Notes under the pieces: generated by a model
What the model was told of the DNA's origin: nothing
What the model saw: only the letters and a program-made list of their open reading frames with translations
Database searches by the model: none
IMG/VR virus record: IMGVR_UViG_3300028275_000006
Location: 62,001 to 126,000 of that record
Reading direction: 5' to 3' (one strand)
DNA length: 64,000 nt
Shown: one piece after another, positions 1 through 57,507 of the stretch
Layout of the letters: every line of letters starts with the position of its first letter
Numbering within the stretch: the first letter of the stretch is position 1
Translations under genes and position numbers: made by a program

Positions 1-1177
1 CTAAGTTCTTATTACCATGTTTGCTTTTTAATTCGTAACCGCCTTTAACTTTAACAATATGTTCGTTAAACTGTTCTGGATTCATTTTACCCCAGTAACG
101 TAGCAATACTCCAGCAAGAGCATTGGCTTCGTTTTCGTCTGGACTGCCAGTTGCACCATCTAATTCTCTTGCTTCGTTTTGTTTGCGATGCACTAATTCG
201 TGTGCTAGTGTTCGCATAATATCCATTTGATGTCTATCTTTAACAGATACAACTATGTCTTGTGTTTCAGGATCAAAGTATCCAAGTGCAGTAGTCTTTG
301 TATCACCTACTAATTTAATACGTGGTGCTTGTTCTATTTCTAAAAGTTTGATAGCCCATAATGCAAAGTCTTTGATACGTTGCTTTTTATCTGGAGTCCA
401 TGCTTCCATCAATCCGCCGCCGTCACCGCCGTCTCCCGCAGGCACACTACCTACACCACTGTAGCCTGCATCGGTACCATATAGTCCGTAAGGACCTGGT
501 CCATATAACGCACCGTATTTGTTTCTGCGTTTTTTCTTACGACCTTCGTCTACATCTTTGTCACCACTAGTGGCAATTAATTTTCCTTGACTTCTATCTA
601 GACTTTTTAACTGCTGTGGTTCGTGTTCTTCTTCACCTTGTCCCACACGTTTAGCACGTTTAAGTCCATCTAATATTACTTGTAAACTATCTTCGTCTGC
701 TTGATATTTGATACCAATACCGCCAGCGGCTTCCCAAGCACTGATATTACTACCTCTGTCGTCAATTAATACGTTAGGCATTCCGCTAGGATTTCTAGCG
801 TACTTGGCTTTGTTTGAAACAATGTAAATGTTGTCTGGCAGTTGATTTAAGTGTTCATCGATCCAAATACGTTTGTATTTTTCACTGCCTTCGTGGTCGC
901 CGCGTAATGGGCTAGAACAAATATTGTAGCCACCGGCCACATCAACTACAATATCAATTAGTTTGTCTGCTGTAGGAAACTTTGGTAGACGTGCAAAAAA
1001 GTCTGTTCCTACCATTTTGTTTAATGTAGGATCAGTCTTCGCTGGTGGAATGTCTCTGTAGTTTCCGCTTTTAATGCCAGCAAGTTTAGCATACTCTGTG
1101 AAAAAGTCTGCAAGAACTCCGTCCATGTCTACATAGACTTCCATGCCTTGGGGTAATTCTAAATCGCTTGCTCTCAT
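1..1177 (-). CDS. Multidomain protein, 3'-truncated by the window edge: HAD 5'(3')-deoxyribonucleotidase (NT5C-like) + HExxH zinc-peptidase-like domain + further module
   Basis: Not in the ORF track; translated by hand from ATG 1177 (ATGA overlap with the upstream stop). MRASDLE...VYVDMDGVLADFF (HAD motif I)...LIDDRGSN (motif IV)...MRTLAHELVHRKQ...ENEANALAG...QFNEHIVKVKGGYELKSKHGNKNL; no stop met up to position 1. Confidence 0.8.
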   Translation of the reverse strand, partial: MRASDLELPQGMEVYVDMDGVLADFFTEYAKLAGIKSGNYRDIPPAKTDPTLNKMVGTDFFARLPKFPTADKLIDIVVDVAGGYNICSSPLRGDHEGSEKYKRIWIDEHLNQLPDNIYIVSNKAKYARNPSGMPNVLIDDRGSNISAWEAAGGIGIKYQADEDSLQVILDGLKRAKRVGQGEEEHEPQQLKSLDRSQGKLIATSGDKDVDEGRKKKRRNKYGALYGPGPYGLYGTDAGYSGVGSVPAGDGGDGGGLMEAWTPDKKQRIKDFALWAIKLLEIEQAPRIKLVGDTKTTALGYFDPETQDIVVSVKDRHQMDIMRTLAHELVHRKQNEARELDGATGSPDENEANALAGVLLRYWGKMNPEQFNEHIVKVKGGYELKSKHGNKNL

Positions 1178-26200: not shown

Positions 26201-29200
26201 TGCTAACACACGATAAACAATAGCACCTGCATCGGGATCACCGACGAATGTCAATGCAGTACTTGGACGAACCGGGTTAGTGTCATCGACTTCGTAGAAC
26301 TTAAAGTTTTGGTTACTGCGAATAATAATTGGTTGGTCATGTGACAATGCTACGGCCAAGCCGTTTGTAGCAGTATCATTATTACCGCCAGTGTTGATGT
26401 TTAGACGTAGAACGTTGCCTAGGCCCCATAGGCTAGCCAAACCGCCTGCCCATGTTCCAGGATTGGTACTGTACTCTAGTGTAACACTAGATGTTGTACT
26501 AGCGGTAGCAGTATATACACCGTTAAACCCAGAAGTTGTTGATCCACTAACTGTGTAAGGTACACCAATTCTTGGTGTATATGGTTCAGCAGTGAACGAA
26601 TATGTTACGTAATATTTTCCGCCTGTTGGCCCAGTCTTAAGTGGTGTTCCAGAAACAGACTGTGCCAAGGTACTTGAAACATCAGTTACACCTGCAACTT
26701 CGTAACGAGCAATACCGTTACCAATAATAGTTTTAACAGTGATAAAGAAGCCCGAACCTGTTCCGCCTACGTTTGTATTACTGCAACTTAAAATATCACC
26801 TTCGCTGTATCTAATACCTGCGGCAACTAAACCTACAGTAGTTACTACACCTCCTGACACAACAATGTTAGCAGTGATACCACTACCAGTTCCGCCTGTT
26901 AACGGAACATTAATATATGTGCCGTTGGTATAACCACTACCACCGATTAAACTAGTTGCGTCTAGTTCTGTAACAACGCCAGCGCCGTGGTTAATTTCAA
27001 CTTCAGATACGTTGTATGGTGAGTAATCATGTTGGTAGAAAAATACCTGTAAATCACCAACATCGTTGTCTGTGCTATAAATTCCTTGTTTGTAAACACG
27101 AGCAACCTGCATCATGTTGTCTGACAAGTTACACTTATCTGGAACTTCTAATGGATCACTACCTTCAGAAATAATACCATACTCGCCGTGTGCGTTAGAA
27201 CCGTTCAATGAACGAATCTGTCCACCGTTGTTGGCATAATAAGCAGTCCAGCAATAGTAACTGAACACAGAAACTGTTTCAATCAAACCAATGTTTGTAG
27301 CAACCAGTCCATAACCTAAGTCGTTAATCTGTGTAAAGTCATTTGAACACATACTGGTGTTACCAGCACTTAGTAGCATAAAGTCTTTTACATACTCTAT
27401 GGTAGTAGTGCCAGTGCCAAATGCACCCGGGTCACTTGGATAACGTAGTGTCATCGAAGTTAGTGTAGATGCTACACACTCTACAGCATCATTGTTATAG
27501 TTAGAGTTGCTGTTGCCAAACACTCTATAACGTGTTTTAGTTCTAGGAGCAGTAGTTCCAACGGGCGTAACAATGCTGAATACTACATCGTAAGATCCAT
27601 CCCCGACGCCCGAGTCTGCCTTGCTAGTGAAGGTAGAAATAGTATATTCTAAGTCGTTAGTTACAGGAGTAGTTGTAGAAAGAACTAATCTGTATGTTGG
27701 GTAAACGATAGGTTTGGCACCAGTTAATACTGTTGAAACATCTACTTCCGGGTCTGTAATAACTTCGTTTAATAAATCAAACAACTGTCCTGCTCGTGTA
27801 ACAAATGCAGAGCCGTCGTAGTCAGAACTGAATACCTGTGATACTCTATTCTCTACAGCAACATCGTTAATAACTTGATAATTTAATGTTGGTGGAACTT
27901 GATTCAATACAGCCTGTGCAACTTCCTTGGCATAGGCAAATGAATCTAATGTTTGTGATAATTGATTTTCTAATACAACACGGCTACTAGCAGTACCTAC
28001 ATAGTAACGCTGTGCGGCACGAATTGTTAAGTATGTTCCGCCATATAACAAGTCTGCTGAAACTGCGGCAACAATAAAGCCAACGTCTCGTGAACAAATT
28101 TCTTCATTGTAAACTAATGTGTTTGTATAATTAGCATCGATATAATTTGTTACAGCAGTTTGTAAAGTTGACTTAGCACTTTGTAGTGCAGAATTTGCAC
28201 CAGTTAAGCCAGCACTTACCCAAGCAGTACTTGGAGTAATTGTTGAAGGAACAGAACCGAGCCCAAGGTCGATAATTGTTAAAATTTCTCCAATACGCTG
28301 TCCAGCAGTAGCACTGGCAGAACTGTTACCTGGAGTACCGCGAACCTGCGCAACACCACCTTGTAATGCAGTAATAGGTAAGTCTAATGCAATGTCTTCA
28401 ACTAGACTTTGTAGATAACCATATGCGGCCAATGTTGCTGGTTTCTCAGGAGCCGCAACTTGTAGAGTTGTGTAAGAATAATAAGCCTTACCAGCAATCA
28501 ATGTTTGAATGTTACCACCGTAGGTTAGGTCGTGATATAGTGCATCTAAAATGTATTCTGTATCACGTAAGCATACAGCAGGGTCATAACTTAATCCAAC
28601 ATAGTTGTTAGAAATATATTGAATTACTTCTGCTTTAATAAATTCTCTGTTAGATTCAATCAGTGTTCTAGCACGATTATAATTTACATCGTAGCCTGTT
28701 GGATCAGGAGTTACGATTGCAGGTTCTTGAGTTAGTCCGTTAGTAATAACATCTAAGAACATATTCATGTTGGTAGTTACACTAGTAACTGCGGTAGCAC
28801 TTGCACTAACAACAGATAATATTTCATCTCTTAAGAAAGTAAATGCGTCAATAGTTGCGGCTTTTTGTACGCCAACAGCCACAGCGGCTGAAGCTCTGTA
28901 ATAAGATCTTGCCGCTGTAATTGTCTGGAAGTTGCCGCCAAACATTAAGTCGTAACCAATAGCATCAATTACATAACCCACGTCACGTTGACATGTAGCA
29001 GAATCATAGGTAAATCCTACATATTTGTTGTTAATGTAGTTAATAACTTCTGCTTTGATAAAATCTTTATTATCGACTAACAATGCACGAGCACCACGAG
29101 CACTTGGCGGATTTTCTAAAATGCCAATGAACTCGTCAAACAAATCTTGAATAGTTGCTTCTGCTAAGCCGCCATCGGTAATATCGGTATCGATATACTG

Positions 29201-32200
29201 TAGAACAGATTGTTGATATCGTACTGTTGGATCTTCGTTATTAATAACATTTAATATCAATGTTTCAATGTAGTTAATAGCCGCAAGTGTGTTGGCCAAC
29301 TGCTGGTCAATAACAATCTTAGAACTAGCACTAGCATTGAAGTATGCTAGAGCTGCCTGAACTGTTTTTAAATTACCGCTATAATAAATGTCGTGTGCAA
29401 TAGCATCGCAGATGTATCCAGTGTCACGAGCACAAGTATCTTGGTTGTAACTATATCTTTGTTGTAGATAAACTAATGTGTCAGACTTGATACTTTCTTT
29501 GTTGTTTAACAATAATGTTCTGCTGTCTGTTAACGAACCAGACACACTATAGAAAGTTGGATATTCAATAGTAGGAGCCGCTTCACGTCCGCTTAAAATA
29601 ATAGTATTAATGTAGCCCATTAACACACCTACTCTAGCAGATTCAGTTGCGCTACCTGGATTAACTAAATCAAATACCTGTGTTACAGCACTTTGTTTAG
29701 GGAACGGAACAGGAGTATTAGTAACAACTAACTGTGCAACACCACTGGCATAGGCCAATGCTTCTGTGGTTTGCAATGTTTGTCCAGGAATTTGCAAACT
29801 TCCGTTACCATCGTAATATTGATATCCGGCTTCTACAGTTGCCGAGTTACCTTCATATAGTAAGTCGTAAACAATAGAATTTAAAATGTATGCCGCATCT
29901 CGACGACACTTGTCTTCGTCGTAGACAAAGTCTGGATATTCTTCAGCAATCCAGGCAATAATTTCTTCTTTAATAAATTCAATGTTATCTAAAATAAGAT
30001 TTTTTGCATTTACTCTTGAAGTAGGAGCACCTGACGGATCTGACCATGTAATTGTATCTGATGAAATAATACCGTTAGCAATGATATCTGTTATCTCATC
30101 AAAACTTGCTTCTGCTCTTAGACGTGCAACAGAGTTACCGGCTAATACATCAGAAATTAATGTTCTTGTATAGATTAACGCATCTAAGTATTCATCTTTT
30201 TGGTCTGGAAGAATACTGTATTGTGTGCCGCGATAGTATGATTGTCCAGCACGTACAGCATTAAAGTTTGTACCTAGTGCTAGATCGTAACCTAGTGCAT
30301 CAACAATCAATCCAACGTCACGAGCACATTTGGTTTCGTTGAATGTAAATGGTGGACTTAGTTCTGTATTAATATAACCAATAACTTCTGCTTTGATAAA
30401 GTCGATGTTTCGACGAATTAATTTTCTAGCATTTCCATAGCCGTTGCCGTCATCAGTGTATGCTTCAACTTTAAAAGTTCTTCCGTCAATAACAAATGAG
30501 CAAGGAGTTGTTGGAGCACGTTCACTGCCTGTTACTAGGAATTCTGTGTCGCTGATTTTTTCTTGAATCTTAAGAGGAACGTTACCAGCAAAGCCGTCAA
30601 CATACTGTCCACCAGCAAAACGTTGTTTGTTTAGTGATCCTGCAAAAGAACCGGACTGTTGAATATATGCAGACTTGGTTAAAATTTGACCTTCTGGGTC
30701 AAGTACCATCATAAAGCCGCCGTGGCCTTGACAGGTAATCTGACGAATAATAACAGCATCGTTACATAAGAATACGTCAAGGTCTCTGTTGTTCTTTGGT
30801 TCACTTAAAATATCAGACGGGTCTGTTAGATAGTGATAACCGTATTCTGTGCTGGTTAAAGTTAATCCGTCAAATGTTTTATCTCTACGGAACCAAACGT
30901 CAACCCATGGACTGCGACTTGGGCGGTCCGCTGGACGAACAATACATCTACGCAATTCGTCACCAACGATAGCAACGTTTGGCGGGACACGAATTGGATA
31001 GTCTTCAAAATAGATACCAGATTCAACAACAATACTAATTTGGATATTTTTAACTGCTTGGTCAAACTCTAGGTTTTCGCCAGGCACAAAATCACCAATA
31101 ACATCCTGCAAGTCAAAATAGTCTTCGCCGATACTTGAACTACCATCGGAGCCATAGTATTGATAAATGAAACCCTGTGCGCCGCTGGTACGTCCAACAA
31201 CAATCTTACCGGAGACAATATCTGGTTTTGGTAATTGACCTTGGTCAACACGAGAACCACCGTTGTTAGTAAAGTAAACACGAGTAGTACCAGATGCACC
31301 AGATTCAATTCTTGTAACTTCAGAGAACGCTTCACCGCCACCGTAGGCAATTAACTGACGATAAGGACCAGTTTCCCATGGTGCATCATTTACTAATTGT
31401 TCTGCTTTTTGACAGGCTTTGTTAATACTTGCATAAGCATAAGAACGATCGCGTCCTTCTTTTCCACGCGGTGTACGTGCCTGTGTGTCGTCACCGCCTG
31501 TGGTAACGTACAAGTTAAATCTGCTTGAATAACTTGAATTATCTACATAATATTTTGTAGCGGCTTGTAAGTCATCTTCTCCGTTAGGCGTACCAGCACC
31601 TGCAAGTCCGCCTGGATGATCTGCTAAGTTTAGCACACCAGTCATATCGCCGCCAGTTTTTAATACAACTTCTGCGGCACGTGGTGCTTGGTTACCTGTG
31701 GCGTTTGCTGGCACATTTAAGTGACCAGTCATTGTGTCGCCTGTAATGTTTACATATTTGGAGTCGGCATAACCTTTGTTAATAGCAAAGGAATCTATGC
31801 TATAAAGAGTTTCGTGCTGTGTGTTGAAACTATTAACAGCAGTTTGGAAATCTGTTTGATTAATAGGACTGCGTAAGCCGCCGATTAATTGATTACGTGC
31901 ATCCAGCGCATATTGTAATTTTGGTAATGGGTCGTCCTGTAATTTAGAACTTAATGTATCAATTTTAACGGAACCGTAACTGGTAATAGTACCAGTTGCC
32001 GCACTAGTTGATAAGTTTGTTCCTGCGTTTGTATATACTAGAACATTGTCTACTGTGCCAGTTAACAATAGGGCAGAAGTAGTGTTAAATGAAGTATTGT
32101 CTGTGGACGCGATTGTAACTCGTTGTCCAGGATCTAAATTGTGGTTTGCTGAAAGTGTAATAGTGGCAACGTTGCTACTTCTTGATACACTAACAATATC

Positions 32201-32485
32201 AAAGGTTTCTTGCTCGGAATAATCAAACTGGATAGTACCGTTAGGACTGAAAAAGTCTTTGAATACTAAACTAGTACCAATAGAATTAACTACTGGAATC
32301 TTATTACCTTGTCCTACTAATGTATCAGGAGTATCGCTAAGGTCAGTGAACTTTAAAAATCCGCCTTGACCGAAAACAGCATATAACTCTTGGAAGTTTT
32401 CATTCGTTTTTCTAAACGCTTCACGGATACTATCACCAGTTCCGTCATTACCTGATACGCCGATGTCGACTATTTTACGTGCCAT
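23207..32485 (-). CDS. giant (~3,090 aa) tail/baseplate structural protein with six ~150-aa repeats and a C-terminal chaperone-like domain
   Basis: gp9/gp10-like N-terminus GNDGTGDSIREAFRKTNENF; AATKYYVD fibre motif; C-terminal ATSARYADLAEKY; GGAG RBS before ATG 32485. Confidence 0.8.
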   Translation of the reverse strand: MARKIVDIGVSGNDGTGDSIREAFRKTNENFQELYAVFGQGGFLKFTDLSDTPDTLVGQGNKIPVVNSIGTSLVFKDFFSPNGTIQFDYSEQETFDIVSVSRSSNVATITLSANHNLDPGQRVTIASTDNTSFNTTSALLLTGTVDNVLVYTNAGTNLSTSAATGTITSYGSVKIDTLSSKLQDDPLPKLQYALDARNQLIGGLRSPINQTDFQTAVNSFNTQHETLYSIDSFAINKGYADSKYVNITGDTMTGHLNVPANATGNQAPRAAEVVLKTGGDMTGVLNLADHPGGLAGAGTPNGEDDLQAATKYYVDNSSYSSRFNLYVTTGGDDTQARTPRGKEGRDRSYAYASINKACQKAEQLVNDAPWETGPYRQLIAYGGGEAFSEVTRIESGASGTTRVYFTNNGGSRVDQGQLPKPDIVSGKIVVGRTSGAQGFIYQYYGSDGSSSIGEDYFDLQDVIGDFVPGENLEFDQAVKNIQISIVVESGIYFEDYPIRVPPNVAIVGDELRRCIVRPADRPSRSPWVDVWFRRDKTFDGLTLTSTEYGYHYLTDPSDILSEPKNNRDLDVFLCNDAVIIRQITCQGHGGFMMVLDPEGQILTKSAYIQQSGSFAGSLNKQRFAGGQYVDGFAGNVPLKIQEKISDTEFLVTGSERAPTTPCSFVIDGRTFKVEAYTDDGNGYGNARKLIRRNIDFIKAEVIGYINTELSPPFTFNETKCARDVGLIVDALGYDLALGTNFNAVRAGQSYYRGTQYSILPDQKDEYLDALIYTRTLISDVLAGNSVARLRAEASFDEITDIIANGIISSDTITWSDPSGAPTSRVNAKNLILDNIEFIKEEIIAWIAEEYPDFVYDEDKCRRDAAYILNSIVYDLLYEGNSATVEAGYQYYDGNGSLQIPGQTLQTTEALAYASGVAQLVVTNTPVPFPKQSAVTQVFDLVNPGSATESARVGVLMGYINTIILSGREAAPTIEYPTFYSVSGSLTDSRTLLLNNKESIKSDTLVYLQQRYSYNQDTCARDTGYICDAIAHDIYYSGNLKTVQAALAYFNASASSKIVIDQQLANTLAAINYIETLILNVINNEDPTVRYQQSVLQYIDTDITDGGLAEATIQDLFDEFIGILENPPSARGARALLVDNKDFIKAEVINYINNKYVGFTYDSATCQRDVGYVIDAIGYDLMFGGNFQTITAARSYYRASAAVAVGVQKAATIDAFTFLRDEILSVVSASATAVTSVTTNMNMFLDVITNGLTQEPAIVTPDPTGYDVNYNRARTLIESNREFIKAEVIQYISNNYVGLSYDPAVCLRDTEYILDALYHDLTYGGNIQTLIAGKAYYSYTTLQVAAPEKPATLAAYGYLQSLVEDIALDLPITALQGGVAQVRGTPGNSSASATAGQRIGEILTIIDLGLGSVPSTITPSTAWVSAGLTGANSALQSAKSTLQTAVTNYIDANYTNTLVYNEEICSRDVGFIVAAVSADLLYGGTYLTIRAAQRYYVGTASSRVVLENQLSQTLDSFAYAKEVAQAVLNQVPPTLNYQVINDVAVENRVSQVFSSDYDGSAFVTRAGQLFDLLNEVITDPEVDVSTVLTGAKPIVYPTYRLVLSTTTPVTNDLEYTISTFTSKADSGVGDGSYDVVFSIVTPVGTTAPRTKTRYRVFGNSNSNYNNDAVECVASTLTSMTLRYPSDPGAFGTGTTTIEYVKDFMLLSAGNTSMCSNDFTQINDLGYGLVATNIGLIETVSVFSYYCWTAYYANNGGQIRSLNGSNAHGEYGIISEGSDPLEVPDKCNLSDNMMQVARVYKQGIYSTDNDVGDLQVFFYQHDYSPYNVSEVEINHGAGVVTELDATSLIGGSGYTNGTYINVPLTGGTGSGITANIVVSGGVVTTVGLVAAGIRYSEGDILSCSNTNVGGTGSGFFITVKTIIGNGIARYEVAGVTDVSSTLAQSVSGTPLKTGPTGGKYYVTYSFTAEPYTPRIGVPYTVSGSTTSGFNGVYTATASTTSSVTLEYSTNPGTWAGGLASLWGLGNVLRLNINTGGNNDTATNGLAVALSHDQPIIIRSNQNFKFYEVDDTNPVRPSTALTFVGDPDAGAIVYRVLAYGNKGPLNEDLAVDESILGFDTTYDYVKLLVNAENVSNADPDNVGQTMGSTAGDTKIAIDRVNETDIESRLNTGDMITAWDGKIHKILSYTDMGLLAGYAYVEIEDVADKCLAGTSASGINTPVDPDFNLDISEPPTLRAGLSSTEPAEVIVRISTCRVTGHDFLDIGTGGYNDTNFPSKIYGAPKEPNQAREVTERTRGRCFYVTTDQDGIFRVGRFFTVDQGTGRVTFAASIALSNLDGLGFKRGVTVSEFSNDDRFTDGANDALPTEAATQGYIDRRLGMDRTNNVLDPTALIGPGYMDRAGLLTFTGPDPMDMGGFVIANLGSPTADTDAANKLYVRNQELSDDRVDTSTSPARSLNDLLVYNGVKWINAETVSTGDIQTSLTPGTKNLALNIKSNVIINADVNSSAAIAQSKLDMNKATTRANATSIAQADLGLASFKSTEFTATNGWIELQTSSSTTTGVLQTKLQYIANDTYLGNNTGSATYPRQVTSGQIVTNGDGIKNASFAPGSVGSNGRAMILTAIGPNAYSTTNISTSAQASSLIQSDGSGRVAVAQLDLTSSSYKTLSVSGTTLTMTTPGAVDFLTAVGTTSAGTTITTVGTLSANAITSASTTTFSPANANVTLSPSGTGTVTIAPASVGSINNVNIGATTRGNGYFKLLSANDTVTLTANQAVTGAANGTGTLQVTGGAGISGDLRVGGTIYGAVTGTLAGTLGLSTYLSFTAGSSYDGSTTRTIQTNATSAATGSTLVARDVNGDFNGRYINSSYFNSSDDVSGGTITYIMAKFGDNYYRSATAAKVASFISGQSMNIAGNASTVTINYNNDSNSTYQMLWGSGNSVYGTGGIYCNPFTDTLYATLFNGTATSARYADLAEKYLSDAEYETGTVVVFGGDEEITVTDKHNDTRVAGVISEKPAHLMNSDLAGKHPLAVGLTGRLPCKVLGKVKKGDILVTAAKKGYAIVNNTPSVGTIIGKSLENKDDLGEGLVEIVVGRF
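27750..30450 (-). repeat. six tandem 140-159-aa repeats, consensus N(x)2-FIKAEVIxYI...C-x-R-D-x-G-Y-I-x-D-A-I-x-Y-D-L-x-Y-G-G-N
   Basis: Cys codons at 30326, 29906, 29432, 28991, 28571, 28094 (spacing 140/158/147/140/159 aa). Confidence 0.85.
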
Positions 32486-32515
32486 TGAATACTCCAAAAA
32501 AGACTTTGTATCCAA

Positions 32516-34832: not shown

Positions 34833-34993
34833 TACCAGTGCCTTATTACACCCGCTACAATGAATATGTTAGTTATTATATAAGTCAATACAATAACAGT
34901 TCGAATCAATGCAATCCTGTCCGCTTCTTGTTTGGTAACACCGGCTTTCTCTCCTAGTGCCTTGGCCCATAGTCTCCAAAACTTACGTACCAT
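34832..34993 (-). CDS. small membrane protein (53 aa) of the WRLWAKALG type
   Basis: Hand translation MVRKFWRLWAKALGEKAGVTKQEADRIALIRTVIVLTYIITNIFIVAGVIRHW; fills the gap between queD and the GT gene. Confidence 0.75.
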   Translation of the reverse strand: MVRKFWRLWAKALGEKAGVTKQEADRIALIRTVIVLTYIITNIFIVAGVIRHW

Positions 34994-35540
34994 CTTTATA
35001 AAAAACACTACGACTCTTAGGAGTTTCCCACCATTCGATGCTGTGAACTTTGACGCCTAATTTTTTCATTTTGACATCAACTAATTCTGCCATCCAACTA
35101 CTTAGGTGTTCCGATGTTGGAACAAAGTCTACTACCATAAATCCTTCGTAGTATTCTTGTTCAGGACCAGACATATTAGCATAATAGATTGGATGAATAT
35201 GCCAACCTGCAACGTATTCGGTTTCTGGAACATACACTGGAATTAGCTCGACTTTTTCTCCCAGCATCTTAGTAAACAGCGGATCGTTTTTATCAATAAT
35301 AAATTGATGATCAATATAAGTGTTGATCCATTTCTTTAGCCATTCTAAATGTCTAAAGTCAGTGACCATTCCAGTTTTATCTAATCCGTCGCCTGTTAAA
35401 TGAACCTGCATTTTACCTTCGTGTCCATGTAAATGTCTGCAAGCACATTTCAAGTCTGCCGCATATTCGCCGTTTAGTGTTTGTGTATGAACACGATGTC
35501 CATAACAAAATTCAAATGTTTTATCAATGATCCAAGTCAT
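34983..35540 (-). CDS. queD: 6-carboxy-5,6,7,8-tetrahydropterin synthase QueD (PTPS family)
   Basis: FCYGHRV, CRHLHGH, GMVTDF, IDHQF, PTSEHL, WETPKS. Confidence 0.88.
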   Translation of the reverse strand: MTWIIDKTFEFCYGHRVHTQTLNGEYAADLKCACRHLHGHEGKMQVHLTGDGLDKTGMVTDFRHLEWLKKWINTYIDHQFIIDKNDPLFTKMLGEKVELIPVYVPETEYVAGWHIHPIYYANMSGPEQEYYEGFMVVDFVPTSEHLSSWMAELVDVKMKKLGVKVHSIEWWETPKSRSVFYKDGT

Positions 35541-51773: not shown

Positions 51774-51802
51774 ATTTTACTGCCAAATTAACTCTTTGTC
51801 AA
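51774..51802 (-). promoter_or_regulatory. sigma70-type promoter for the ligase run
   Basis: TTGACA-17-TAAAAT. Confidence 0.7.
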
Positions 51803-52490
51803 TTGGTTTGACATAATTTAATTGGGTTTCAATGGATTTGGTTGTGTAATTTACACCGTGTGCTTTGACTCTGGCACGTATAGTTTGAGTCTCTCCAGTC
51901 TTACCTAGTGCAGACTTATTCAAAAAGTTTACCAAATGACCGCCATCTGTGACAGCATCGTGGGCATAGCAGTTAAGTTTTTTGACATATCTAGTATTAA
52001 CATATCTAATATTCAGTAAAATTGGCTCACCTACTACTCCGATATGCTCTTGTTTGGCAGTTTTGGACTCTGTGATAATACGTTTCTTTTCCATTTCTTT
52101 GAAATACAAACTAGGAACGCTGGCCAAAATACCAAAGTCTTTAAAAATTACTTCAGGTTTTTGAGTACTAGAAAACACTCGTTGCATATAGTCGTTGAGA
52201 TTGTCTGCAATAACACCAAATGTCAGTCTACGATAATAATGTATAATAGCACTGGCTGTATCTGTATCTTCCTGAGTAACTTTGACCAGTACTTTATAAT
52301 CTTTATTCAAGTCCGGAACCATTTGATAACTCAAATGTTCTTTGCTATTCCAGCGTTCATCGCTGTCAGGATCTGCATTGGTAAAAGCACTAACGCTGGT
52401 ATAGCCTTTAGTTCTAAAAATAGCACAGGCCATAGCCAAAACATTTTCAGCAGGCCATGTACGTTCATTTAATGGAGTAAAATCATTCAT
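51777..52490 (-). CDS. hypothetical protein (possible C-terminal OB-like domain)
   Basis: 237-aa ORF in operon. Confidence 0.65.
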   Translation of the reverse strand: MNDFTPLNERTWPAENVLAMACAIFRTKGYTSVSAFTNADPDSDERWNSKEHLSYQMVPDLNKDYKVLVKVTQEDTDTASAIIHYYRRLTFGVIADNLNDYMQRVFSSTQKPEVIFKDFGILASVPSLYFKEMEKKRIITESKTAKQEHIGVVGEPILLNIRYVNTRYVKKLNCYAHDAVTDGGHLVNFLNKSALGKTGETQTIRARVKAHGVNYTTKSIETQLNYVKPIDKELIWQ

Positions 52491-52728
52491 AATCGATCAT
52501 CGTTTGTTGTTGAATAAGAATGTTTTTGCCTATTTCAAATAAGCCTACCCCGCCAATAAGGTCTTTAACGCTGGCGTGAATGTTTACTTCGCCATCTTTG
52601 TCTATACTGGCCATGACAAATTCTTCCATGCTACCTTCTTCGATACGCTTACGCACTTCTTCGATAACATCCAGCATATTTTCTTTGCGACGTTTTTCGT
52701 TGCGGTCGTTGATGTTAATTACTTCCAT
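52483..52728 (-). CDS. hypothetical protein
   Basis: AAGGAG RBS. Confidence 0.6.
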   Translation of the reverse strand: MEVININDRNEKRRKENMLDVIEEVRKRIEEGSMEEFVMASIDKDGEVNIHASVKDLIGGVGLFEIGKNILIQQQTMIDYE

Positions 52729-53185
52729 TAGATTCTCCTTTATTACCCTTAAGATAATCTTTTTCTTTGTAAGTCTTAATCATGTGACAACGACAGCAGA
52801 GTGTTTGAATATTTTCTGCAACATCTTTACCACCATCGCTTTGACGTTCTAAGTGGTCGCCGTGCATTACACCACGCATACAACGTAATTTATGGAACGG
52901 ATCTTCGATATCGTCAAACTGCGGATCAACACGAGGATCGTATCCACACTTCTCGCACACCCACCCACGATAGAATGTGTGTGGACGATCCGCTTTGCCC
53001 ATACCACCGTACTCTGTTAATTGCAGTTGGTGTTCACGACAGTAACCATCGCTACCAGGACCATCGAAGATTGTAAGGTCATTGTCACAATCTTCTAACT
53101 TACATTTGCATTGTAAGCGATATTGTTCCTTAAGGATACTCTGTCCTTTGAGTTTATCCTTATTAGGATCTCTGAGCTTGGACAT
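52715..53185 (-). CDS. zinc-binding HNH (His-Me) endonuclease-like protein
   Basis: CEKCG...GDHLERQSDGGKDVAENIQTLCCRCH; ATG 1 nt after the upstream stop. Confidence 0.75.
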   Translation of the reverse strand: MSKLRDPNKDKLKGQSILKEQYRLQCKCKLEDCDNDLTIFDGPGSDGYCREHQLQLTEYGGMGKADRPHTFYRGWVCEKCGYDPRVDPQFDDIEDPFHKLRCMRGVMHGDHLERQSDGGKDVAENIQTLCCRCHMIKTYKEKDYLKGNKGESNGSN

Positions 53186-53186
53186 A

Positions 53187-54332
53187 TTACCACAAGTCTT
53201 TCTTAGCAACAGTAAAACCGTTGTTAGCAGAATATTCTGGTGTCTTCAATTTAGTACTCTTCTTAACCTGTGCAATCAAGAACGGAATACCTGTACGCAT
53301 TTCTGAAGTAAAGCCACGCAATCCTGACTCTGCGTATGACTCTGGGTTGGCCTTCTTGTACCATTCTTCATAGGCCATCTTAACCTTATCCCAGAACGGA
53401 CCGTTGGGGCCAAAGTCACCATCGAAGTATTCTTTTGTAAATGCCGCAAAGTCTAGCAAGTATTTGTCATCAACAGTAATGCCTTGTTCAAAACACAGAT
53501 TAAAGTATTCGTATAACTGACGTGCTTCCTTAGGTTCTACAGGACGTTGTTGGTTTAAGTAAGTCCAGTACTGAGCAAACATACGGGTGACTTCCGGATC
53601 CTTACGAGTCTTCAGACTCTTGCTCATAAGTGTGTCAGCCAACAAACTGAACGCACCAGGTTGGTCTTCGTCACCAAACTTGCTGTGTGTGGCAAACAAG
53701 CCAGCGGCCGCAAGATAATCGTTCTTCTTGGCTGTGTCAGTCCATTCGGTGTCATCTGCACCGTCAACCTTAGAGCCATAAACCATTTGCTTGTACTTGT
53801 CAATGAAGTCAAGTTCTTCTTTAGCATCGCCGTTTAACAAAATAAAGTTACGACGAATTTCTAATTTGTGTTTTACATTATACACAACCACTGGCACCAT
53901 TGTTTGTGCTGTGCGTTCACCGAACACTTTGGTAAGAATAATGTAAAGAGTAATTGCGGTGTGCTGTCCGTCCCAGGCAATGTAATAACCAGGCTTGTCT
54001 TCGTCAATATAAACTTGAATAGCCATAGTCATTGTGCTACGGAAGTGTTGAAGAATGTTTAGAACATGTCGCAGATTAAGACTGCGTTGCATCGTGGAGT
54101 CAATTAGGATCTTGTCCATTGGCACCATGATTGCTTGGCACAACAGCAGGTCGGTAAAGGTTGTCCATTCTTTGTGACGACGTTTAAATTCGTCAACTAC
54201 TCCGGTGAGTAGTCCAACAAACATAGGAGCGGTTTTGAGTGCTTCAGCCAAACGTTCTTGTAGAGTTACAAAATGGCTATCCGATTTGAGATATTGCTCG
54301 TTGATAATCTGAGCATGGGTTTTTTGTGTCAT
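53187..54332 (-). CDS. ParB/Srx-fold protein with DUF262 (GmrS)/DndB-like motifs
   Basis: MQRSL, WDGQHT, NFILLNG in the order QR...DGQ(Q/H)...FxxxN. Confidence 0.6.
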   Translation of the reverse strand: MTQKTHAQIINEQYLKSDSHFVTLQERLAEALKTAPMFVGLLTGVVDEFKRRHKEWTTFTDLLLCQAIMVPMDKILIDSTMQRSLNLRHVLNILQHFRSTMTMAIQVYIDEDKPGYYIAWDGQHTAITLYIILTKVFGERTAQTMVPVVVYNVKHKLEIRRNFILLNGDAKEELDFIDKYKQMVYGSKVDGADDTEWTDTAKKNDYLAAAGLFATHSKFGDEDQPGAFSLLADTLMSKSLKTRKDPEVTRMFAQYWTYLNQQRPVEPKEARQLYEYFNLCFEQGITVDDKYLLDFAAFTKEYFDGDFGPNGPFWDKVKMAYEEWYKKANPESYAESGLRGFTSEMRTGIPFLIAQVKKSTKLKTPEYSANNGFTVAKKDLW

Positions 54333-54397
54333 ATAATTTCCTTTCTAGGCCTTCTCTTGGCCACCTACACACAACATTATTATTGTGTATATGGAAT

Positions 54398-54426
54398 ATT
54401 ATACAGTCAAATTATTTAAAAGTCAA
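54398..54426 (-). promoter_or_regulatory. sigma70-type promoter for the ParB-fold/HNH operon
   Basis: TTGACT-17-TATAAT. Confidence 0.75.
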
Positions 54427-54427: not shown

Positions 54428-54643
54428 TCAAAGGCGGTATGTAATTCGGCCTTTGGACAAATCGTAAGGGCTCATTTCAATCCGAACTTTGTCGCCCAAG
54501 ATGATTTTGATTTTATTTTGGCGCAGTCGGCCATTAGTGTAGCAAGTAAGAACATGCCCATTTTCCAAAGTTACCCTAAACATATTGCTAGGTAATACTT
54601 CAGAAATGGATCCTTCCATTTCTAATAAATCGCTTTTGCTCAT
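54428..54643 (-). CDS. infA: translation initiation factor IF-1
   Basis: [11 protein letters not shown]...FRVTLENGH...[21 protein letters not shown]. Confidence 0.93.
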
Positions 54644-54813
54644 TCTTTAGTAAAGATCATACGACCATCGGTTACGGAGATATGAATTTTATCTCCTTCT
54701 TTCCATCCCATTTTTTCACAGATTTCAGGAGGAATTTTGAACATGACATTATCTGGATCTCCAGGTATGTCTTCGAATATTTCCTCTACCGTGTACGTTT
54801 TTGATTCGTTCAT
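54640..54813 (-). CDS. AbrB/MazE-like small DNA-binding protein (57 aa)
   Basis: Hand translation [57 protein letters not shown]; AAGGA RBS; ATGA overlap with infA. Confidence 0.65.
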
Positions 54814-54852
54814 AATCCTTAGTTTATTATATTAGTTTAAAAATGTCAACTT

Positions 54853-57507
54853 TTAGTTTACCGATATATTGACATTTGGTGCAGGAAATATCCCCAAACG
54901 CACATTCATAGTCAGCGCCGATTGGGTGTTAATAGTTATTGGTAATGATGCGGTATTACTGCTAACCGTCATTACTCCAGTTAATGGAACACTAACATCA
55001 CCAGCCGCAAATGGATATGTTGCTACAGTAGTAGACCAACGAGCGTTAACTCCTGTATGTACATCAACTTGATTAGGAGTGGCTTCGTAAAAGACTGCTT
55101 CGTAAACCATATTAGGTGAACCTAGTGTGCCAGATGTAGACGCTGTTCCCTCCCAGCGAACACGGAAAGTTCTGTTAGGTGCTGTGCCTTCTGCACCATA
55201 ATAGATTCGTTGACAACTATTGTCTGCAGAACTTATCATTATCTTTGGATAAGGAGGGTTAGTACCATTTAACTGACTCCAGTTTGATGAACCAGCACCA
55301 AATGTGATATATGTATTTGTTCCAATATAAATTGTATTGTATGTTGTACCACAGAATGTTACATTGAACGGCAGTGGAACAGTCCAGTATCCATCGTCTT
55401 GACTGCCAACAAAGGTCAACGCTCCAGGCACAGTAGGTGTTGAACTAGACAATGCTAGGGCACCTAATATACTATTTGTAATAACACTACTGGAACCGTT
55501 AGGTAAACCAGTAGTTAAGAATCTATTTCCGCTGTTAGGTCTTGTATCTAAAGTTATACCAGTAACTATAGCATCAGCAGTATAAACACCAGAGAACGCA
55601 GTAGTAGTCAATGAACCGGACGGCGCAGGCTTTGCTGTAATAATATAAGGAACCTGTGTACCATTAGCAACGTTAGTAGTAGTTAATGTTACTGTAGCAG
55701 TTTGAGTATTTGATACTGTTGAATCGTCTACTGCTAGACTAAATGTTGCGGCCTTATTATAACTGTTAAGAGTTTTCTTTCTTGGATATACTTGTCCACT
55801 GGTAGGTCTGTACCAGTTGTTTACTGTTGGGAAAGGTGTTGGATAATATCCACCGACTTCTTGACCTGGATGTCTTGTTCCTTGAAAGAACAACATCTTT
55901 CTACAACTATTTGGATTGTAAGTAAACCCAGCATCTTTACCATCAAACGTTCCGCCGTTGGTACTTAATACTGTGTCTGTACTAATTGCGGCTATTAATG
56001 CACGAGCATCTGCCTGTGTCATACGAGGATATTTTTCTGCATAACAGGCAATTACACCTACGGTATTAGGACAACTCATACTAGTGCCAGGACACTTTTT
56101 AAAATTATTATTAATTGAGTCAGATCCGCCTAATGCAGTAACTCTTGGATCAGTAGCGGCAGTCCCATCATACAACGATGCTCCACTATTCCAAACACTT
56201 TGAACACCAGAACCGGGTGCATATACATCAATGCGAGGACCGTAGTTACTAAATTCTGCTTTGTAGTCGCCGACCTCAATACCAGTCGAGGCGTAGATAC
56301 TAGCATTTGTTGCTTCGTTGTGTTGTCCTATTGCTCCGCTACAGATAATTTTTGTATCTTCTGTGCCACCATTTGCCGAGCCAGGACTACTACCTCGGTG
56401 AATATAGTAACTAACTCCTCCGTAGACCATATAATTGTCATAGTCAGGACCTCCAGGAACATCTATATACCAATAACTATTTCCTGCGCTGGCTACAATG
56501 ATGACGCCTTCGCTCATCGCCTCAATCATATCTATATCCGTTGCGGAACTTTGTGTTGGCAATGCCGCACCAGTACGGATCCTAAATGTGTCTAAATCTG
56601 CTGTAGTCCATCCTGTACTAGGACGATTATATGTAACACCTCTATAATACACAGAACTAATGCTAGACTCTGTAATTCCATTTAAACGATATCCCCAACT
56701 GTTATTCATAACTGTTGGATTTTTAACACCAGTCAACGGATTGATTGGTTTATTTTTATGAAATTCTCTTACATAATCTATGCTATCGTAGAATGTAATA
56801 TTATAGATATTAGCATCGCGAGCAAACCCTTGTGTGTTACCTGCACAGTTTCCAGTAGTATGTCCACCATGTTCTTGTAATCGGTAACCCGGATAACTGT
56901 ATTCGCCTGCCGCACCACCAGTTACTACAGGATTGTGTTGCTCCCAGTTGTATTCAACCATTCGGCTATAACCAGTACCATCTGGATTCTGTGCATATTC
57001 GTACACAGTAGGGTACGGAGTTCCATCGTCCATAACAACTACGTCAACATTTTTACCACTGGCATCCATAATAATAGTTGCCGCTTGATTAACTGTGCCA
57101 GTAATACCCCAATTACTAATATCTGTTTTTCTGTTTAGTCGTAACAGGCCCCAGTTGATATCGACGCTGTCGCTGGCCACACGTTTGTCAAAGTTTGAAC
57201 TAGTTTGAGTAAACCCGTCACAGCCGATAACCATACCAAGATCTGTATGATTTAATTCAACAGTAAAAACTCTAGGATCGTTTCTAACCTGTGCCGCTTC
57301 GTCATAGGTCAACATATAATGTGTATTTCGACTAATAGGTCGTCTGTTAACACACTCTACCATTCGATCAGGAATGTATAAATTTCCGCTAGGTGTTTCC
57401 ATATCTTTATAAAACTCTTCCGAGTCTTTAAAGTCTTTTAAGGTAACAATGTATTCTTTAAGACTTTGATCTTCTGGATTCCCTAGATGAGGAATTGGTG
57501 TTGTCAT
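54853..57507 (-). CDS. subtilisin-like (S8) serine protease with prodomain and C-terminal beta domains, probably virion-associated
   Basis: VVVMDDG (Asp), HGGHTTG (His), SAGNS (oxyanion), GTSMSCP (Ser). Confidence 0.85.
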   Translation of the reverse strand: MTTPIPHLGNPEDQSLKEYIVTLKDFKDSEEFYKDMETPSGNLYIPDRMVECVNRRPISRNTHYMLTYDEAAQVRNDPRVFTVELNHTDLGMVIGCDGFTQTSSNFDKRVASDSVDINWGLLRLNRKTDISNWGITGTVNQAATIIMDASGKNVDVVVMDDGTPYPTVYEYAQNPDGTGYSRMVEYNWEQHNPVVTGGAAGEYSYPGYRLQEHGGHTTGNCAGNTQGFARDANIYNITFYDSIDYVREFHKNKPINPLTGVKNPTVMNNSWGYRLNGITESSISSVYYRGVTYNRPSTGWTTADLDTFRIRTGAALPTQSSATDIDMIEAMSEGVIIVASAGNSYWYIDVPGGPDYDNYMVYGGVSYYIHRGSSPGSANGGTEDTKIICSGAIGQHNEATNASIYASTGIEVGDYKAEFSNYGPRIDVYAPGSGVQSVWNSGASLYDGTAATDPRVTALGGSDSINNNFKKCPGTSMSCPNTVGVIACYAEKYPRMTQADARALIAAISTDTVLSTNGGTFDGKDAGFTYNPNSCRKMLFFQGTRHPGQEVGGYYPTPFPTVNNWYRPTSGQVYPRKKTLNSYNKAATFSLAVDDSTVSNTQTATVTLTTTNVANGTQVPYIITAKPAPSGSLTTTAFSGVYTADAIVTGITLDTRPNSGNRFLTTGLPNGSSSVITNSILGALALSSSTPTVPGALTFVGSQDDGYWTVPLPFNVTFCGTTYNTIYIGTNTYITFGAGSSNWSQLNGTNPPYPKIMISSADNSCQRIYYGAEGTAPNRTFRVRWEGTASTSGTLGSPNMVYEAVFYEATPNQVDVHTGVNARWSTTVATYPFAAGDVSVPLTGVMTVSSNTASLPITINTQSALTMNVRLGIFPAPNVNISVN

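What the first reader, a model, noticed from the sequence alone, without database searches (positions are those of the whole stretch)
52715..54426. Phage-borne GmrS-like ParB-fold protein plus HNH nuclease under its own promoter
Seen: a sigma70 promoter, a 381-aa protein with QR...DGQHT...FILLN, and 1 nt later a zinc HNH protein. Known: QR, DGQQR and FxxxN are the signature motifs of DUF262 (GmrS/SspE), which partners with a His-Me nuclease in type IV modification-dependent restriction; DGQHR marks DndB-like proteins. Inference: a phage-encoded modification-sensing nuclease that targets competing phage or host DNA. This fits with queD/GT genes that may modify the phage's own DNA. The conserved Arg is replaced by Thr, so activity may differ.
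Basis: partly seen in the sequence, partly recalled or inferred. Interest (0 to 1): 0.7.

Follow-up and report, generated by a model that had tools for sequence, protein, structure and literature searches.

The report
Phage ParB-like plus HNH nuclease cassette
A river jumbo phage carries a tightly linked, self-promoted gene pair, an unnamed ParB-fold protein and a zinc HNH nuclease, that is found only in uncultured phages, is strongly conserved, and probably acts as a two-part DNA-cutting weapon rather than as a classical GmrSD restriction enzyme.

Summary
On the minus strand lie a near-consensus sigma-70 promoter, a 381-aa ORF (QR, DGQHT, FILLN), and 1 nt later a 156-aa zinc HNH.

- **Fold:** The 381-aa protein folds confidently (pLDDT 96) with a ParB/Srx domain at residues 66-175. 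It matches no Pfam, PHROG or PADLOC model. Its nearest named fold is DUF6551, with weak DGQHR/DUF262 sequence signals.
- **Thr, not Arg:** The Thr in DGQHT is conserved across the family, so it is not a lesion.
- **Linkage:** 73/73 ParB-anchored and 78/78 HNH-anchored loci carry both genes.
- **Distribution:** No relative was found in cultured phages or in 185,579 prokaryote genomes.
- **Selection and mobility:** The pair is under strong purifying selection and moves as a unit between genome positions. In the same slot of related phages it is replaced by other ParB-like genes paired with T5orf172 (GIY-YIG-type) or EndoVII-like ORFs.
- **Leader:** The transcribed leader carries covarying GGNC/GN'CC hairpins that travel with the cassette.
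- **Self-modification:** I found no support for a self-modification link. QueD is present, but TGT/DpdA and the two DNA-methylase families searched are absent.

My best reading is an NTP-gated, two-component early nuclease used in DNA-level conflict. This is a new variant of the GmrSD-like kind, and its target is unknown.

The parts
54398..54426 (-). Sigma-70-type promoter TTGACT-17 nt-TATAAT. The -35 hexamer starts right after the stop codon of the upstream IF-1 gene.
   Evidence: 11/12 matches. 49 of 55 distinct relatives' leaders have TTGACN-16..18-TANNNT ending 29-94 nt before the ATG, whatever the genomic context.
54366..54391 (-). Leader hairpin A, an 11-bp stem with a 4-nt loop at the predicted 5' end of the mRNA.
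   Evidence: RNA fold of 54327-54392(-): MFE -17.3 kcal/mol, z -3.77. Analogous stems with different sequences are visible in relatives' leaders, by inspection only.
54348..54362 (-). Leader hairpin B, GGCC-AAGAGAA-GGCC, specific to the cassette.
   Evidence: It is the only perfect NNNN-AAGNGAA-N'N'N'N' hairpin in the 270-kb genome. In 56 distinct leaders there are 76 GC-rich 4-bp hairpins against 6.2+-3.0 in shuffles. Anchored on the loop motif alone, the variable stem position is Watson-Crick in 33/33 cases, with all four pair types. No Rfam match.
54339..54342 (-). Ribosome-binding site AGGA, 6 nt before the ATG, left unpaired in the predicted fold.
53187..54332 (-). 381-aa ParB/Srx-fold protein of an unnamed, phage-only family. 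It has an N-terminal helical extension (1-65), a ParB/Srx domain (66-175) with Q82-R83, D121GQHT125, R160 and F163xxxN167, and an all-helical C-terminal domain (176-381).
52715..53185 (-). 156-aa zinc HNH (beta-beta-alpha-Me) nuclease with an N-terminal CCCH knuckle. Its start lies 1 nt after the stop of the ParB-like gene, so translational coupling is likely.
   Evidence: A homologue lies immediately downstream of the ParB-like gene in 73/73 loci. The reciprocal count is 78/78.

Best explanation
The two genes form a self-contained, early-expressed, two-component nuclease cassette.

Proposed mechanism (inferred, not shown):
- Host RNA polymerase transcribes the cassette from a near-consensus sigma-70 promoter through a structured leader. 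The two ORFs are translationally coupled.
- The 381-aa protein is a divergent member of the DGQHR/DUF262/DUF6551 branch of the ParB/Srx fold. I infer that it binds a nucleotide triphosphate and DNA, and that it supplies loading, target choice or gating.
- The small Zn-HNH has no obvious DNA-targeting domain of its own. I infer that it is the catalytic cutter or nicker.

Proposed role (inferred): DNA-level conflict during infection, most likely against co-infecting related phages or other parasitic DNA, as exclusion or homing-like competition. Self DNA would be spared through sequence or regulatory specificity, not through DNA modification. The leader hairpins are a candidate site of autoregulation.

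Shown here: the fold, conserved catalytic and motif residues, obligate linkage, the promoter, purifying selection, cassette relocation and replacement, and hairpin covariation.
For: - Fold and motifs: AF2 pLDDT 96. The ParB/Srx domain matches KorB, SerK, Srx, SbnI and PadC at Z 5.7-6.6 and ParB/Noc at Foldseek probability 0.99. A DUF6551 cluster aligns at TM 0.53/0.72 over residues 66-371. The QR, DGQHT and R..F...N motifs are conserved in 92 relatives.
- NTP binding: phage DUF6551 fusions bind CTP or ATP experimentally (PMC12704722).
- Nuclease: HNH catalytic and Zn residues are invariant, and the fold neighbours are McrA, ZRANB3 and Gme nicking HNH.
- Linkage: 73/73 and 78/78 loci. It holds down to 26-38% identity.
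- Modular effector: in the same IF-1/orf81 slot, related phages carry other ParB-like genes paired with T5orf172/MUG113-like ORFs (by ESM Atlas features only) or a weakly EndoVII-like one.
- Relocation as a unit: the pair sits between PhoH and its neighbour in L027 and at other positions in L006-L016.
- Phage-only distribution.
- Strong purifying selection: 92-94% amino-acid identity where 4-fold sites are near saturation.
- Early promoter in 49/55 contexts.
- No DNA-modification genes of the kinds searched.
Against: - No biochemical data exist for any member.
- No target is known.
- The complex prediction gave no answer.
- ParB-like and HNH divergences correlate only moderately (r 0.54), with many discordant pairs. 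A tight, co-evolving interface is therefore not evident.
- Strong purifying selection, and the fact that the conserved slot was never seen empty, fit a housekeeping-like role such as host DNA breakdown at least as well as a selfish or arms-race role.
- The genome is only about 71% complete, so self-modification genes could be missing from view.
- The Thr in place of the phosphate-contacting Arg leaves NTP binding unproven.
Confidence: 0.4

Rival explanations
1. Host-takeover nuclease. The pair degrades or nicks the host chromosome early in infection to shut the host down and supply nucleotides, in the way T4 EndoII and EndoIV do. The ParB-like subunit would load on host DNA.
For: - Early sigma-70 promoter.
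- Strong purifying selection, stronger than on the ligase and the S8 protease.
- Every lineage with the conserved slot has some ParB-like plus small-ORF cassette in it and never an empty site.
- One copy per genome in G000.
- The small partner ORFs resemble T4 EndoII (GIY-YIG) and EndoVII in kind; that comparison rests on my own knowledge.
Against: - No means of sparing phage DNA was found: no TGT/DpdA, Dam or N6_N4 methylase, and ThyA looks canonical.
- Replacement by non-orthologous cassettes and relocation are unusual for a simple housekeeping nuclease.
Confidence: 0.25
2. One reading: a split GmrSD-like type IV enzyme that senses modified DNA (glc-hmC, 7-deazaguanine, phosphorothioate) of rival phages or the host and cuts it.
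For: - The architecture, a DGQ[HQ]x ParB/Srx protein plus a His-Me nuclease, parallels GmrSD, BrxU and SspE.
- Weak PF03235 and TIGR03187 signals in some relatives.
- ESM Atlas neighbours include a viral cluster in which 51% of members carry GmrSD_N.
- A weak PADLOC mREase_IV hit of the HNH core, E 2e-4.
Against: - DUF262 and DUF1524 HMM membership is not met.
- BrxU aligns only at Z 4.2, rmsd 10 A.
- The family is absent from prokaryote genomes, where type IV systems live.
- No evidence that this phage modifies its own DNA.
- Nothing here tests modification sensing.
Confidence: 0.12
3. A purely selfish homing element. The HNH is a homing endonuclease, and the ParB-like gene is either its DNA-binding subunit or a hitch-hiker. 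The cassette spreads by cutting empty sites in co-infecting genomes.
For: - The cassette sits at different positions in related genomes and between otherwise adjacent conserved genes.
- Different cassettes occupy one intergenic slot.
- The partner ORFs point to families typical of homing endonucleases: HNH, plus weaker T5orf172/GIY-YIG and EndoVII-like signals.
Against: - The HNH was never found without the ParB-like gene.
- Both genes are under strong purifying selection with no decayed copies seen.
- No empty slot was observed.
- The same cassette type occurs at many different sites, which strict site-specific homing does not predict.
Confidence: 0.12
4. The pair acts on the phage's own DNA or gene expression. 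This could be site-specific nicking, replication or recombination initiation, or packaging help. Alternatively the ParB-like protein is a DndB/KorB-like NTP-dependent repressor acting at the leader hairpins.
For: - DndB and KorB are ParB-fold transcriptional repressors (PMC12704722; KorB is a fold neighbour).
- Covarying hairpins lie between the promoter and the RBS.
- A DNA ligase gene lies close by.
- Weak HNH similarity to terminase-associated HNHs of mycobacteriophages.
Against: - The cassette is not near packaging genes, and its position is not conserved.
- Regulation alone does not explain obligate pairing with a catalytically intact nuclease.
Confidence: 0.08

Closest known systems
GmrSD / BrxU / SspE (DUF262 ParB/Srx NTPase plus DUF1524 His-Me nuclease; type IV or PT-dependent restriction)
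   Same: - A ParB/Srx-fold domain with the QR, DGQ[QH]x and FxxxN motifs, combined with a His-Me-finger nuclease.
- A helical domain follows the ParB-like domain.
- Linked to mobile DNA.
   Different: - No PF03235 or PF07510-type HMM membership.
- The motif is DGQHT, not DGQQR.
- The nuclease is a separate Zn-HNH (PF01844), and in relatives it can be swapped for T5orf172-like or EndoVII-like ORFs.
- The family occurs only in uncultured, apparently lytic jumbo phages and not in cells.
- Modification dependence is untested.
DUF6551 (PF20188), phage ParB-like proteins
   Same: - The best named structural match covers both the ParB/Srx and helical domains: TM 0.53 by query and 0.72 by hit.
- Six of 92 relatives give weak N-terminal HMM hits.
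- Members are viral.
- Two phage DUF6551 fusions bind CTP or ATP (PMC12704722).
   Different: - The protein itself has no PF20188 hit at E<=1.
- It is longer, with a 65-residue N-terminal extension.
- No function is known for DUF6551, and no nuclease partnership has been described for it in the papers read.
DndB / DGQHR domain (TIGR03187, PF14072)
   Same: - Shares four residues of the DGQHR signature, plus QR and FxxxN.
- 18 of 92 relatives give sub-threshold TIGR03187 hits.
- DndB is an NTP-binding ParB-fold autoregulator, and this cassette has a structured leader that could be an operator.
   Different: - Scores lie far below the cut-off: 14 bits against 58.85.
- Thr replaces Arg.
- No dnd genes lie nearby.
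- The partner is a nuclease.
Free-standing phage homing endonucleases (T4 Mob/Seg types; ICP1 Odn with T5orf172)
   Same: - Small HNH, T5orf172/GIY-YIG-like or EndoVII-like ORFs inserted between conserved phage genes.
- Variable position.
- Alternative occupants of one slot.
   Different: - The nuclease is always paired with a ParB-like gene.
- It has no recognisable DNA-binding domain apart from a small zinc knuckle.
- It shows no decay.
- No empty sites were seen.
Canonical ParB / Noc / KorB CTPase clamps
   Same: The N-terminal fold is shared (Foldseek probability 0.99; VIA Z 6.5 to KorB).
   Different: - No GERRxR box.
- No HTH or parS-type module detected.
- No ParA partner.
- No PF02195 hit.

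Membership tests
GmrS / DUF262 (PF03235 GmrSD_N) | Profile HMM match at or above the gathering score | tested here: not met
   No hit at E<=1 for the protein. Only 2 of 92 relatives hit, at E 0.015-0.045 and 14-16 bits against a cut-off of 33.2.
GmrS / DUF262 (PF03235 GmrSD_N) | DGQQR motif together with QR and FxxxN (PMC4619093) | tested here: inconclusive
   QR (82-83) and FxxxN (163-167) are present and conserved. The pentapeptide is DGQHT, with H and T family-wide.
GmrS / DUF262 (PF03235 GmrSD_N) | ParB/Srx fold | tested here: met
   BrxU itself aligns only at Z 4.2, rmsd 10 A.
GmrSD system | Partner or fused DUF1524 (GmrD) His-Me nuclease | tested here: not met
   The partner matches PF01844 and PF14279 HNH, not DUF1524. 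Its fold neighbours are ZRANB3, McrA and Gme HNH.
GmrSD system | NTP-dependent cleavage of modified DNA | not testable with these tools
   Needs biochemistry.
DGQHR domain / DndB (TIGR03187, PF14072) | Profile match above the cut-off and an invariant DGQHR | tested here: not met
   TIGR03187 gives E 0.024 and 14.4 bits against a cut-off of 58.85. 18 of 92 relatives hit below threshold. PF14072 hits 1 of 92. The motif has Thr in place of Arg.
DUF6551 (PF20188) | Profile HMM match | tested here: not met
   No hit for the protein. Six of 92 relatives match only profile positions 3-50 of 242, at 22-25 bits against a cut-off of 26.8.
DUF6551 (PF20188) | Shared two-domain fold | tested here: met
   An ESM Atlas cluster in which 89% of members carry PF20188 aligns at TM 0.53/0.72, 251 residues, rmsd 4.2 A, over residues 66-371.
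ParB-CTPase (PF02195 ParB_N) | HMM match, the GERRxR box II and an HTH/parS module | tested here: not met
   No PF02195 hit. The motif is DGQHT. No HTH family was detected. Only the fold is shared.
HNH endonuclease (PF01844) | HMM above the cut-off, the catalytic D/H-N-H residues and a Cys4 zinc site | tested here: met
   33.9 bits against 21.4. D110, H111, N125, C130 and C133 are invariant, and C77, C80 and H134 at least 90% conserved. The model has pLDDT 90.8 with HNH neighbours.
Free-standing homing endonuclease | The nuclease gene occurs alone and sporadically, with empty sites in relatives | tested here: not met
   78/78 HNH-anchored loci have the ParB-like gene upstream. The conserved slot is always filled by some ParB-like plus small-ORF pair. 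The position is variable.

The most novel reading that the evidence does not exclude
A phage-only class of two-component nucleases in which a ParB-fold, NTP-gated DNA clamp supplies target recognition for interchangeable, catalytic-only nuclease subunits (Zn-HNH, EndoVII-like, T5orf172/GIY-YIG). The cassette would be autoregulated through covarying RNA hairpins in its own leader and used by abundant freshwater jumbo phages for kin discrimination or exclusion of co-infecting genomes. It would then be a new mechanism of inter-phage warfare, or a split homing system.
Probability: 0.25. Interest if true: 0.8.

Novelty: new variant of a known kind. Interest (0 to 1): 0.62.

Why it matters
- **Scale.** The ParB-like family has at least 513 clusters at 90% identity and 205 at 50%. 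It has no name in Pfam, PHROGs or PADLOC, and it occurs in widespread river and lake jumbo phages that have no cultured representative.
- **What it would extend.** If the pair is an NTP-gated nuclease, the GmrSD/SspE logic (a ParB-fold sensor plus a His-Me cutter) would reach from cellular defence into lytic phage genomes. The effector would also be shown to be modular.
- **ParB-fold diversity.** It adds a natural DGQHT variant to the growing set of non-CTP ParB-fold switches.
- **A possible new cis-regulatory element.** The cassette-specific covarying leader hairpins are testable and not in Rfam.
- **Practical use.** The family gives an annotation handle for hundreds of hypothetical proteins in viromes.

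Tried and rejected
- **Complex prediction.** ParB-like plus HNH, using alignments A1 and A2, scored 0.00: no answer, neither for nor against binding.
- **Cultured phages.** Searches of INPHARED by DNA and by protein (P0001, P0001:60-240, P0264) found nothing useful. For the HNH they found only weak core similarity to terminase-proximal HNHs of mycobacteriophages.
- **PDB profile search.** The A1 profile against PDB sequences gave only chance hits.
- **Profile-profile comparison.** I could not compare A1 with DUF262, DndB or DUF6551 because no member sequences of those families were available. A last homologue search with P0264 returned 3 proteins without Pfam labels.
- **Relatives search.** The A1 alignment is too diverse for pattern scans, so A3 was used instead.
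- **RNAalifold.** On a MAFFT alignment of leaders it predicted no structure, because the stems are short and the loops misaligned. I therefore used a loop-anchored, non-circular count. The hairpin-filtered alignment A5 was not used for statistics because it was selected on pairing.
- **15-mer hairpin scan.** Scanning IMG/VR with the exact 15-mer gave mostly chance hits; 11 of 80 lay upstream of the family.
- **Five related fragments.** Five 65-95 kb fragments around the ligase lack the cassette. They are only 16-26% complete, so this shows variable position, not absence from those genomes.
- **Metatranscriptome contigs.** They cover the operon at low depth. DNA carry-over cannot be excluded and no 5' ends are resolved.
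- **Recent horizontal transfer.** I considered it as the cause of the high identity and rejected it, because synonymous sites are near saturation.
Full report
**1. What is there**

The window is bases 174577-238576 of a 270-kb IMG/VR virus record. CheckV estimates it at about 71% complete. Identical DNA is held in many riverine metagenome runs. All elements of the finding lie on the minus strand.

- A promoter, TTGACT-17-TATAAT, occupies 54426..54398. It is the best match in the 3.7 kb scanned.
- A leader of about 60 nt follows.
- A 381-aa ORF occupies 53187..54332.
- After a 1-nt gap comes a 156-aa ORF at 52715..53185.
- The second ORF matches PF01844 HNH above its cut-off and several PHROG HNH families.
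- The next two small genes (orf81 at 52483..52728 and orf237 at 51777..52490) overlap in series, and no terminator is predicted. They are probably co-transcribed, but they do not belong to the cassette (see section 4).

**2. The 381-aa protein**

It has no hit in Pfam (even at E<=1), PHROGs or PADLOC. Even so, it belongs to a large family:

- 513 clusters at 90% identity, most of them 78-96% identical to it.
- 205 representatives at 50% identity, down to about 22-25% identity.

In an alignment of 92 diverse full-length members (A1):

- R83 is invariant.
- Q82, G122, Q123, H124, T125 and R160 are at least 90% conserved.
- The consensus reads QR ... WDGQHT ... RxxFIxxN.

QR, DGQH(R) and FxxxN are the triad that Machnicka et al. 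describe for DGQHR domains and GmrS (PMC4619093). The Thr is a fixed family character, not a lapse.

Sequence-level links to named families are weak and partial:

| Family | Relatives with a hit (of 92) | Best E-value |
|---|---|---|
| TIGR03187 DGQHR | 18 | 1e-4 |
| PF20188 DUF6551 | 6 | 2e-5 |
| PF03235 GmrSD_N | 2 | 0.015 |
| PF14072 DndB | 1 | 0.026 |

All of these fall below the curated cut-offs. The window's own protein gives TIGR03187 at E 0.024.

An AlphaFold2 model built with A1 is very confident (pLDDT 96.1, pTM 0.91). Structure searches gave the following:

- Foldseek places residues of about 66-175 in the ParB/Noc/KorB/sulfiredoxin fold (probability 0.99, E from 2e-3).
- An independent VIA-align search gives SerK at Z 6.6, KorB 6.5, Srx 6.5, SbnI 6.0 and PadC 5.7 over 66-175.
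- The same search gives BrxU (GmrSD family) only Z 4.2, with rmsd 10 A.
- The best named match over both domains is an ESM Atlas cluster in which 89% of members carry DUF6551. It aligns at TM 0.53 by query and 0.72 by hit, over 251 residues (66-371).
- Feature-based Atlas neighbours are mostly viral clusters (50-100% of members with a record), a few of which carry GmrSD_N, DUF6551 or ParB_N.
- BFVD hits are uncharacterised proteins of uncultured phages and of T4-like cyanophages.

In a recent survey, phage ParB-fold proteins fused to DUF6551 bound CTP or ATP (PMC12704722).

My conclusion is that this is a new, unnamed, phage-only branch of the DGQHR/DUF262/DUF6551 part of the ParB/Srx superfamily. 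NTP binding is plausible but unproven.

**3. The HNH**

In 25 relatives (A2):

- D110-H111, N125, C130 and C133 are invariant, and H134 is nearly so.
- C77 and C80, the other two cysteines of the Cys4 zinc site, are at least 90% conserved.
- So is an N-terminal C28/C33/C49/H52 knuckle.
- The model has pLDDT 90.8.
- Its nearest solved structures are the ZRANB3 HNH, EcoKMcrA, the Gme nicking HNH, TasH and ScoMcrA. All scores are weak.
- Atlas neighbours are viral PF01844 clusters.

It is an intact McrA-type beta-beta-alpha-Me nuclease, not a DUF1524/GmrD domain. Apart from the small knuckle it has no recognisable DNA-targeting domain.

**4. Linkage, distribution and mobility**

*Linkage.*
- In 80 IMG/VR loci found with the ParB-like gene, all 73 with enough downstream DNA carry the HNH directly after it, with overlapping or nearly abutting ORFs.
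- In 80 loci found with the HNH, all 78 with enough upstream DNA carry the ParB-like gene.
- The pairing persists in relatives at 38% (L027) and 26% (L031) identity. One relative at 32% identity (L030) has a different 183-aa ORF downstream instead.

*Distribution.*
- No relative was found in 50,697 cultured-phage records.
- A scan with the family's conserved WDGQHT pattern found none in one genome from each of 185,579 prokaryote species.
- G000 has a single copy.

*Position.*
- The pair sits at different positions in related jumbo phages. In L027 it lies between PhoH and a gene that is PhoH's neighbour in G000. In L006-L016 the flanks are homologues of distant G000 regions.
- Most ligase-anchored loci lack it near the ligase.

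*Replacement in the same slot.* Where the G000 synteny (S8 protease, AbrB-like, IF-1, [slot], orf81, orf237, ligase) is kept, the slot is never empty. It holds either this cassette or a different one:

| Locus | ParB-like gene | Partner ORF | Partner affinity |
|---|---|---|---|
| L058 | 367 aa, DGNHT | 143 aa | T5orf172/MUG113-like (GIY-YIG clan) by ESM Atlas features only; no Pfam or PHROG hit |
| L114 | 375 aa, DGQHT | 122 aa | T5orf172/MUG113-like (GIY-YIG clan) by ESM Atlas features; Pfam GIY-YIG only at E 0.05 |
| L107 | 420 aa, ..MQHRT | 167 aa | Weakly EndoVII-like, with D-H..N residues |

The L107 gene did not reach the A1 profile threshold and was called ParB-like on its motifs alone. 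So the recurring unit is a ParB-like gene plus a small ORF that is an HNH or, by weaker evidence, another nuclease type.

*Selection.*
- Against L006 and L007 the pair keeps 92-94% amino-acid identity.
- In the same comparisons, four-fold degenerate sites are only 40-56% identical, which is near saturation.
- The ligase and the S8 protease keep about 82-84% at similar synonymous divergence.
- This is strong purifying selection, not recent transfer.

*Partner shuffling.* ParB-like and HNH pairwise identities correlate only moderately (r 0.54). There are 127 pairs with ParB-like above 75% but HNH below 55%, and 37 pairs the other way round. HNH alleles have therefore been shuffled among ParB-like lineages.

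**5. Promoter and leader**

- 49 of 55 distinct upstream regions have TTGACN-16..18-TANNNT ending 29-94 nt before the ATG, in every genomic context.
- The predicted leader of the window folds into an 11-bp hairpin plus GGCC-AAGAGAA-GGCC and leaves the RBS free (-17.3 kcal/mol, z -3.77).
- The second hairpin is the only one of its form in the 270-kb genome.
- Across 56 distinct leaders there are 76 GC-rich 4-bp hairpins in the 62 nt before the RBS, against 6.2+-3.0 in shuffles. There are usually two in tandem, each followed by GC.
- In a test anchored only on the loop motif CAAGWGAAG, the adjacent variable stem position is Watson-Crick in 33 of 33 cases. The pair types are G:C 13, C:G 11, T:A 6 and A:T 3.
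- Pairing kept at a freely varying position argues for a base-paired nucleic-acid structure, most simply RNA, because it lies in the transcribed leader.
- There is no Rfam match.
- Its function is unknown. Candidates are autoregulation by one of the two proteins or mRNA stabilisation.

**6. Self-modification**

- G000 encodes a QueD/PTPS homologue (window 34983..35540).
- It has no TGT/DpdA and only a sub-threshold QueC-like stretch.
- ThyA matches at full length with a strong score.
- There is no Dam or N6_N4 methylase.

Within the 71% of the genome available, nothing supports the idea that the phage protects itself by modifying its DNA.

**7. Interpretation**

*Shown:* the fold, the conserved motifs, an intact nuclease, obligate linkage, an early-type promoter, purifying selection, relocation and replacement of the cassette, a phage-only distribution, and a covarying leader.

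*Inferred:* the ParB-like protein is an NTP-gated DNA-binding or targeting subunit, and the small nuclease is the effector. This rests on analogy with GmrSD, BrxU and SspE, and with ParB-fold fusions to DNA enzymes.

On the biological role I favour DNA-level conflict with co-infecting phages or other parasitic DNA (confidence about 0.4), for these reasons:
- Alternative cassettes segregate in one slot among close relatives.
- The effector ORFs point to the families used by homing and exclusion nucleases.
- The family is absent from cells.
- No self-modification is apparent.

Host-chromosome degradation is a serious rival (0.25). The cassette looks quasi-essential: it is never absent from the conserved slot and it is under strong constraint.

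Three other readings are each less likely:
- A purely selfish homing element (0.12).
- A role on the phage's own DNA or gene expression (0.08).

The complex prediction gave no answer. Metatranscriptome contigs cover the operon only at low depth, and DNA carry-over is not excluded.

**8. Verdict**

The feature is real and more than chance. Its family assignment (GmrS) and its modification story are not supported.

This is a new variant of the known kind "ParB/Srx NTPase plus His-Me nuclease". It is carried by uncultured freshwater jumbo phages, has a modular effector, and has its own structured leader. I score interest at 0.62.

Noticed in passing
window 54348-54391 (-), and leaders of L201-L264: The cassette-specific 5' leader carries one to three small hairpins (GGNC-RAG..-GN'CC followed by GC). 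They covary perfectly at the variable stem position and move with the cassette. They are not in Rfam.
   Followed up: partly
L058:1436-2967, L107:4249-6016, L114:252-1750: In related phages, the slot between the IF-1 gene and orf81 holds alternative cassettes: other ParB-like genes (DGNHT, MQHRT, DGQHT) paired with T5orf172/MUG113-like or weakly EndoVII-like ORFs. The slot was never seen empty.
   Followed up: partly
window 54428-54643 (-): A phage-encoded translation initiation factor IF-1 homologue (PF01176, E 5e-23). It is 93-100% conserved in the closest relatives and 55-84% in more distant ones. The cassette's -35 hexamer starts right after its stop codon.
   Followed up: no
window 54640-54813 (-) and 54853-57507 (-): A 57-aa AbrB/MazE-like ORF (a weak PF04014 hit) and an 884-aa S8 subtilase lie upstream in the same orientation, behind another TTGACA-17-TAAACT site at 54849.
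   Followed up: no
L201-L280 pairs: ParB-like and HNH divergences are discordant (r 0.54). At least two HNH subtypes, one with HNN (C-N-S-D-K) in place of the last His, are paired with both near and far ParB-like lineages. This implies recombination at the gene boundary.
   Followed up: partly
window 34983-35540 (-); genome C1:37188-37331: A QueD/PTPS homologue is present, with only a sub-threshold QueC-like stretch and no TGT/DpdA in the 270 kb. A 7-deazaguanine DNA modification pathway is therefore not evident.
   Followed up: partly
L027:1506-3008: A relative carries a 500-aa radical-SAM gene between the clamp-loader and PhoH genes, which are much closer together in G000 (one 149-aa ORF between them). 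This is a second indel hot spot next to where that phage keeps its ParB-like/HNH cassette.
   Followed up: no
window 23207-32515 (-): A very long ORF of 3102 aa, not examined.
   Followed up: no
window 52944-54348: One metatranscriptome contig (run X21) ends at 54348, the 3' foot of leader hairpin B. Others read through the promoter from the IF-1 gene. Depth is too low, and these are contigs rather than reads, so no transcript end can be called.
   Followed up: partly
L030:5229-5780: A relative at 32% identity is followed by an unrelated 183-aa ORF with an E-F-E-H-V-I-P...H-N-H-like stretch instead of the zinc HNH. Its family is unresolved.
   Followed up: no
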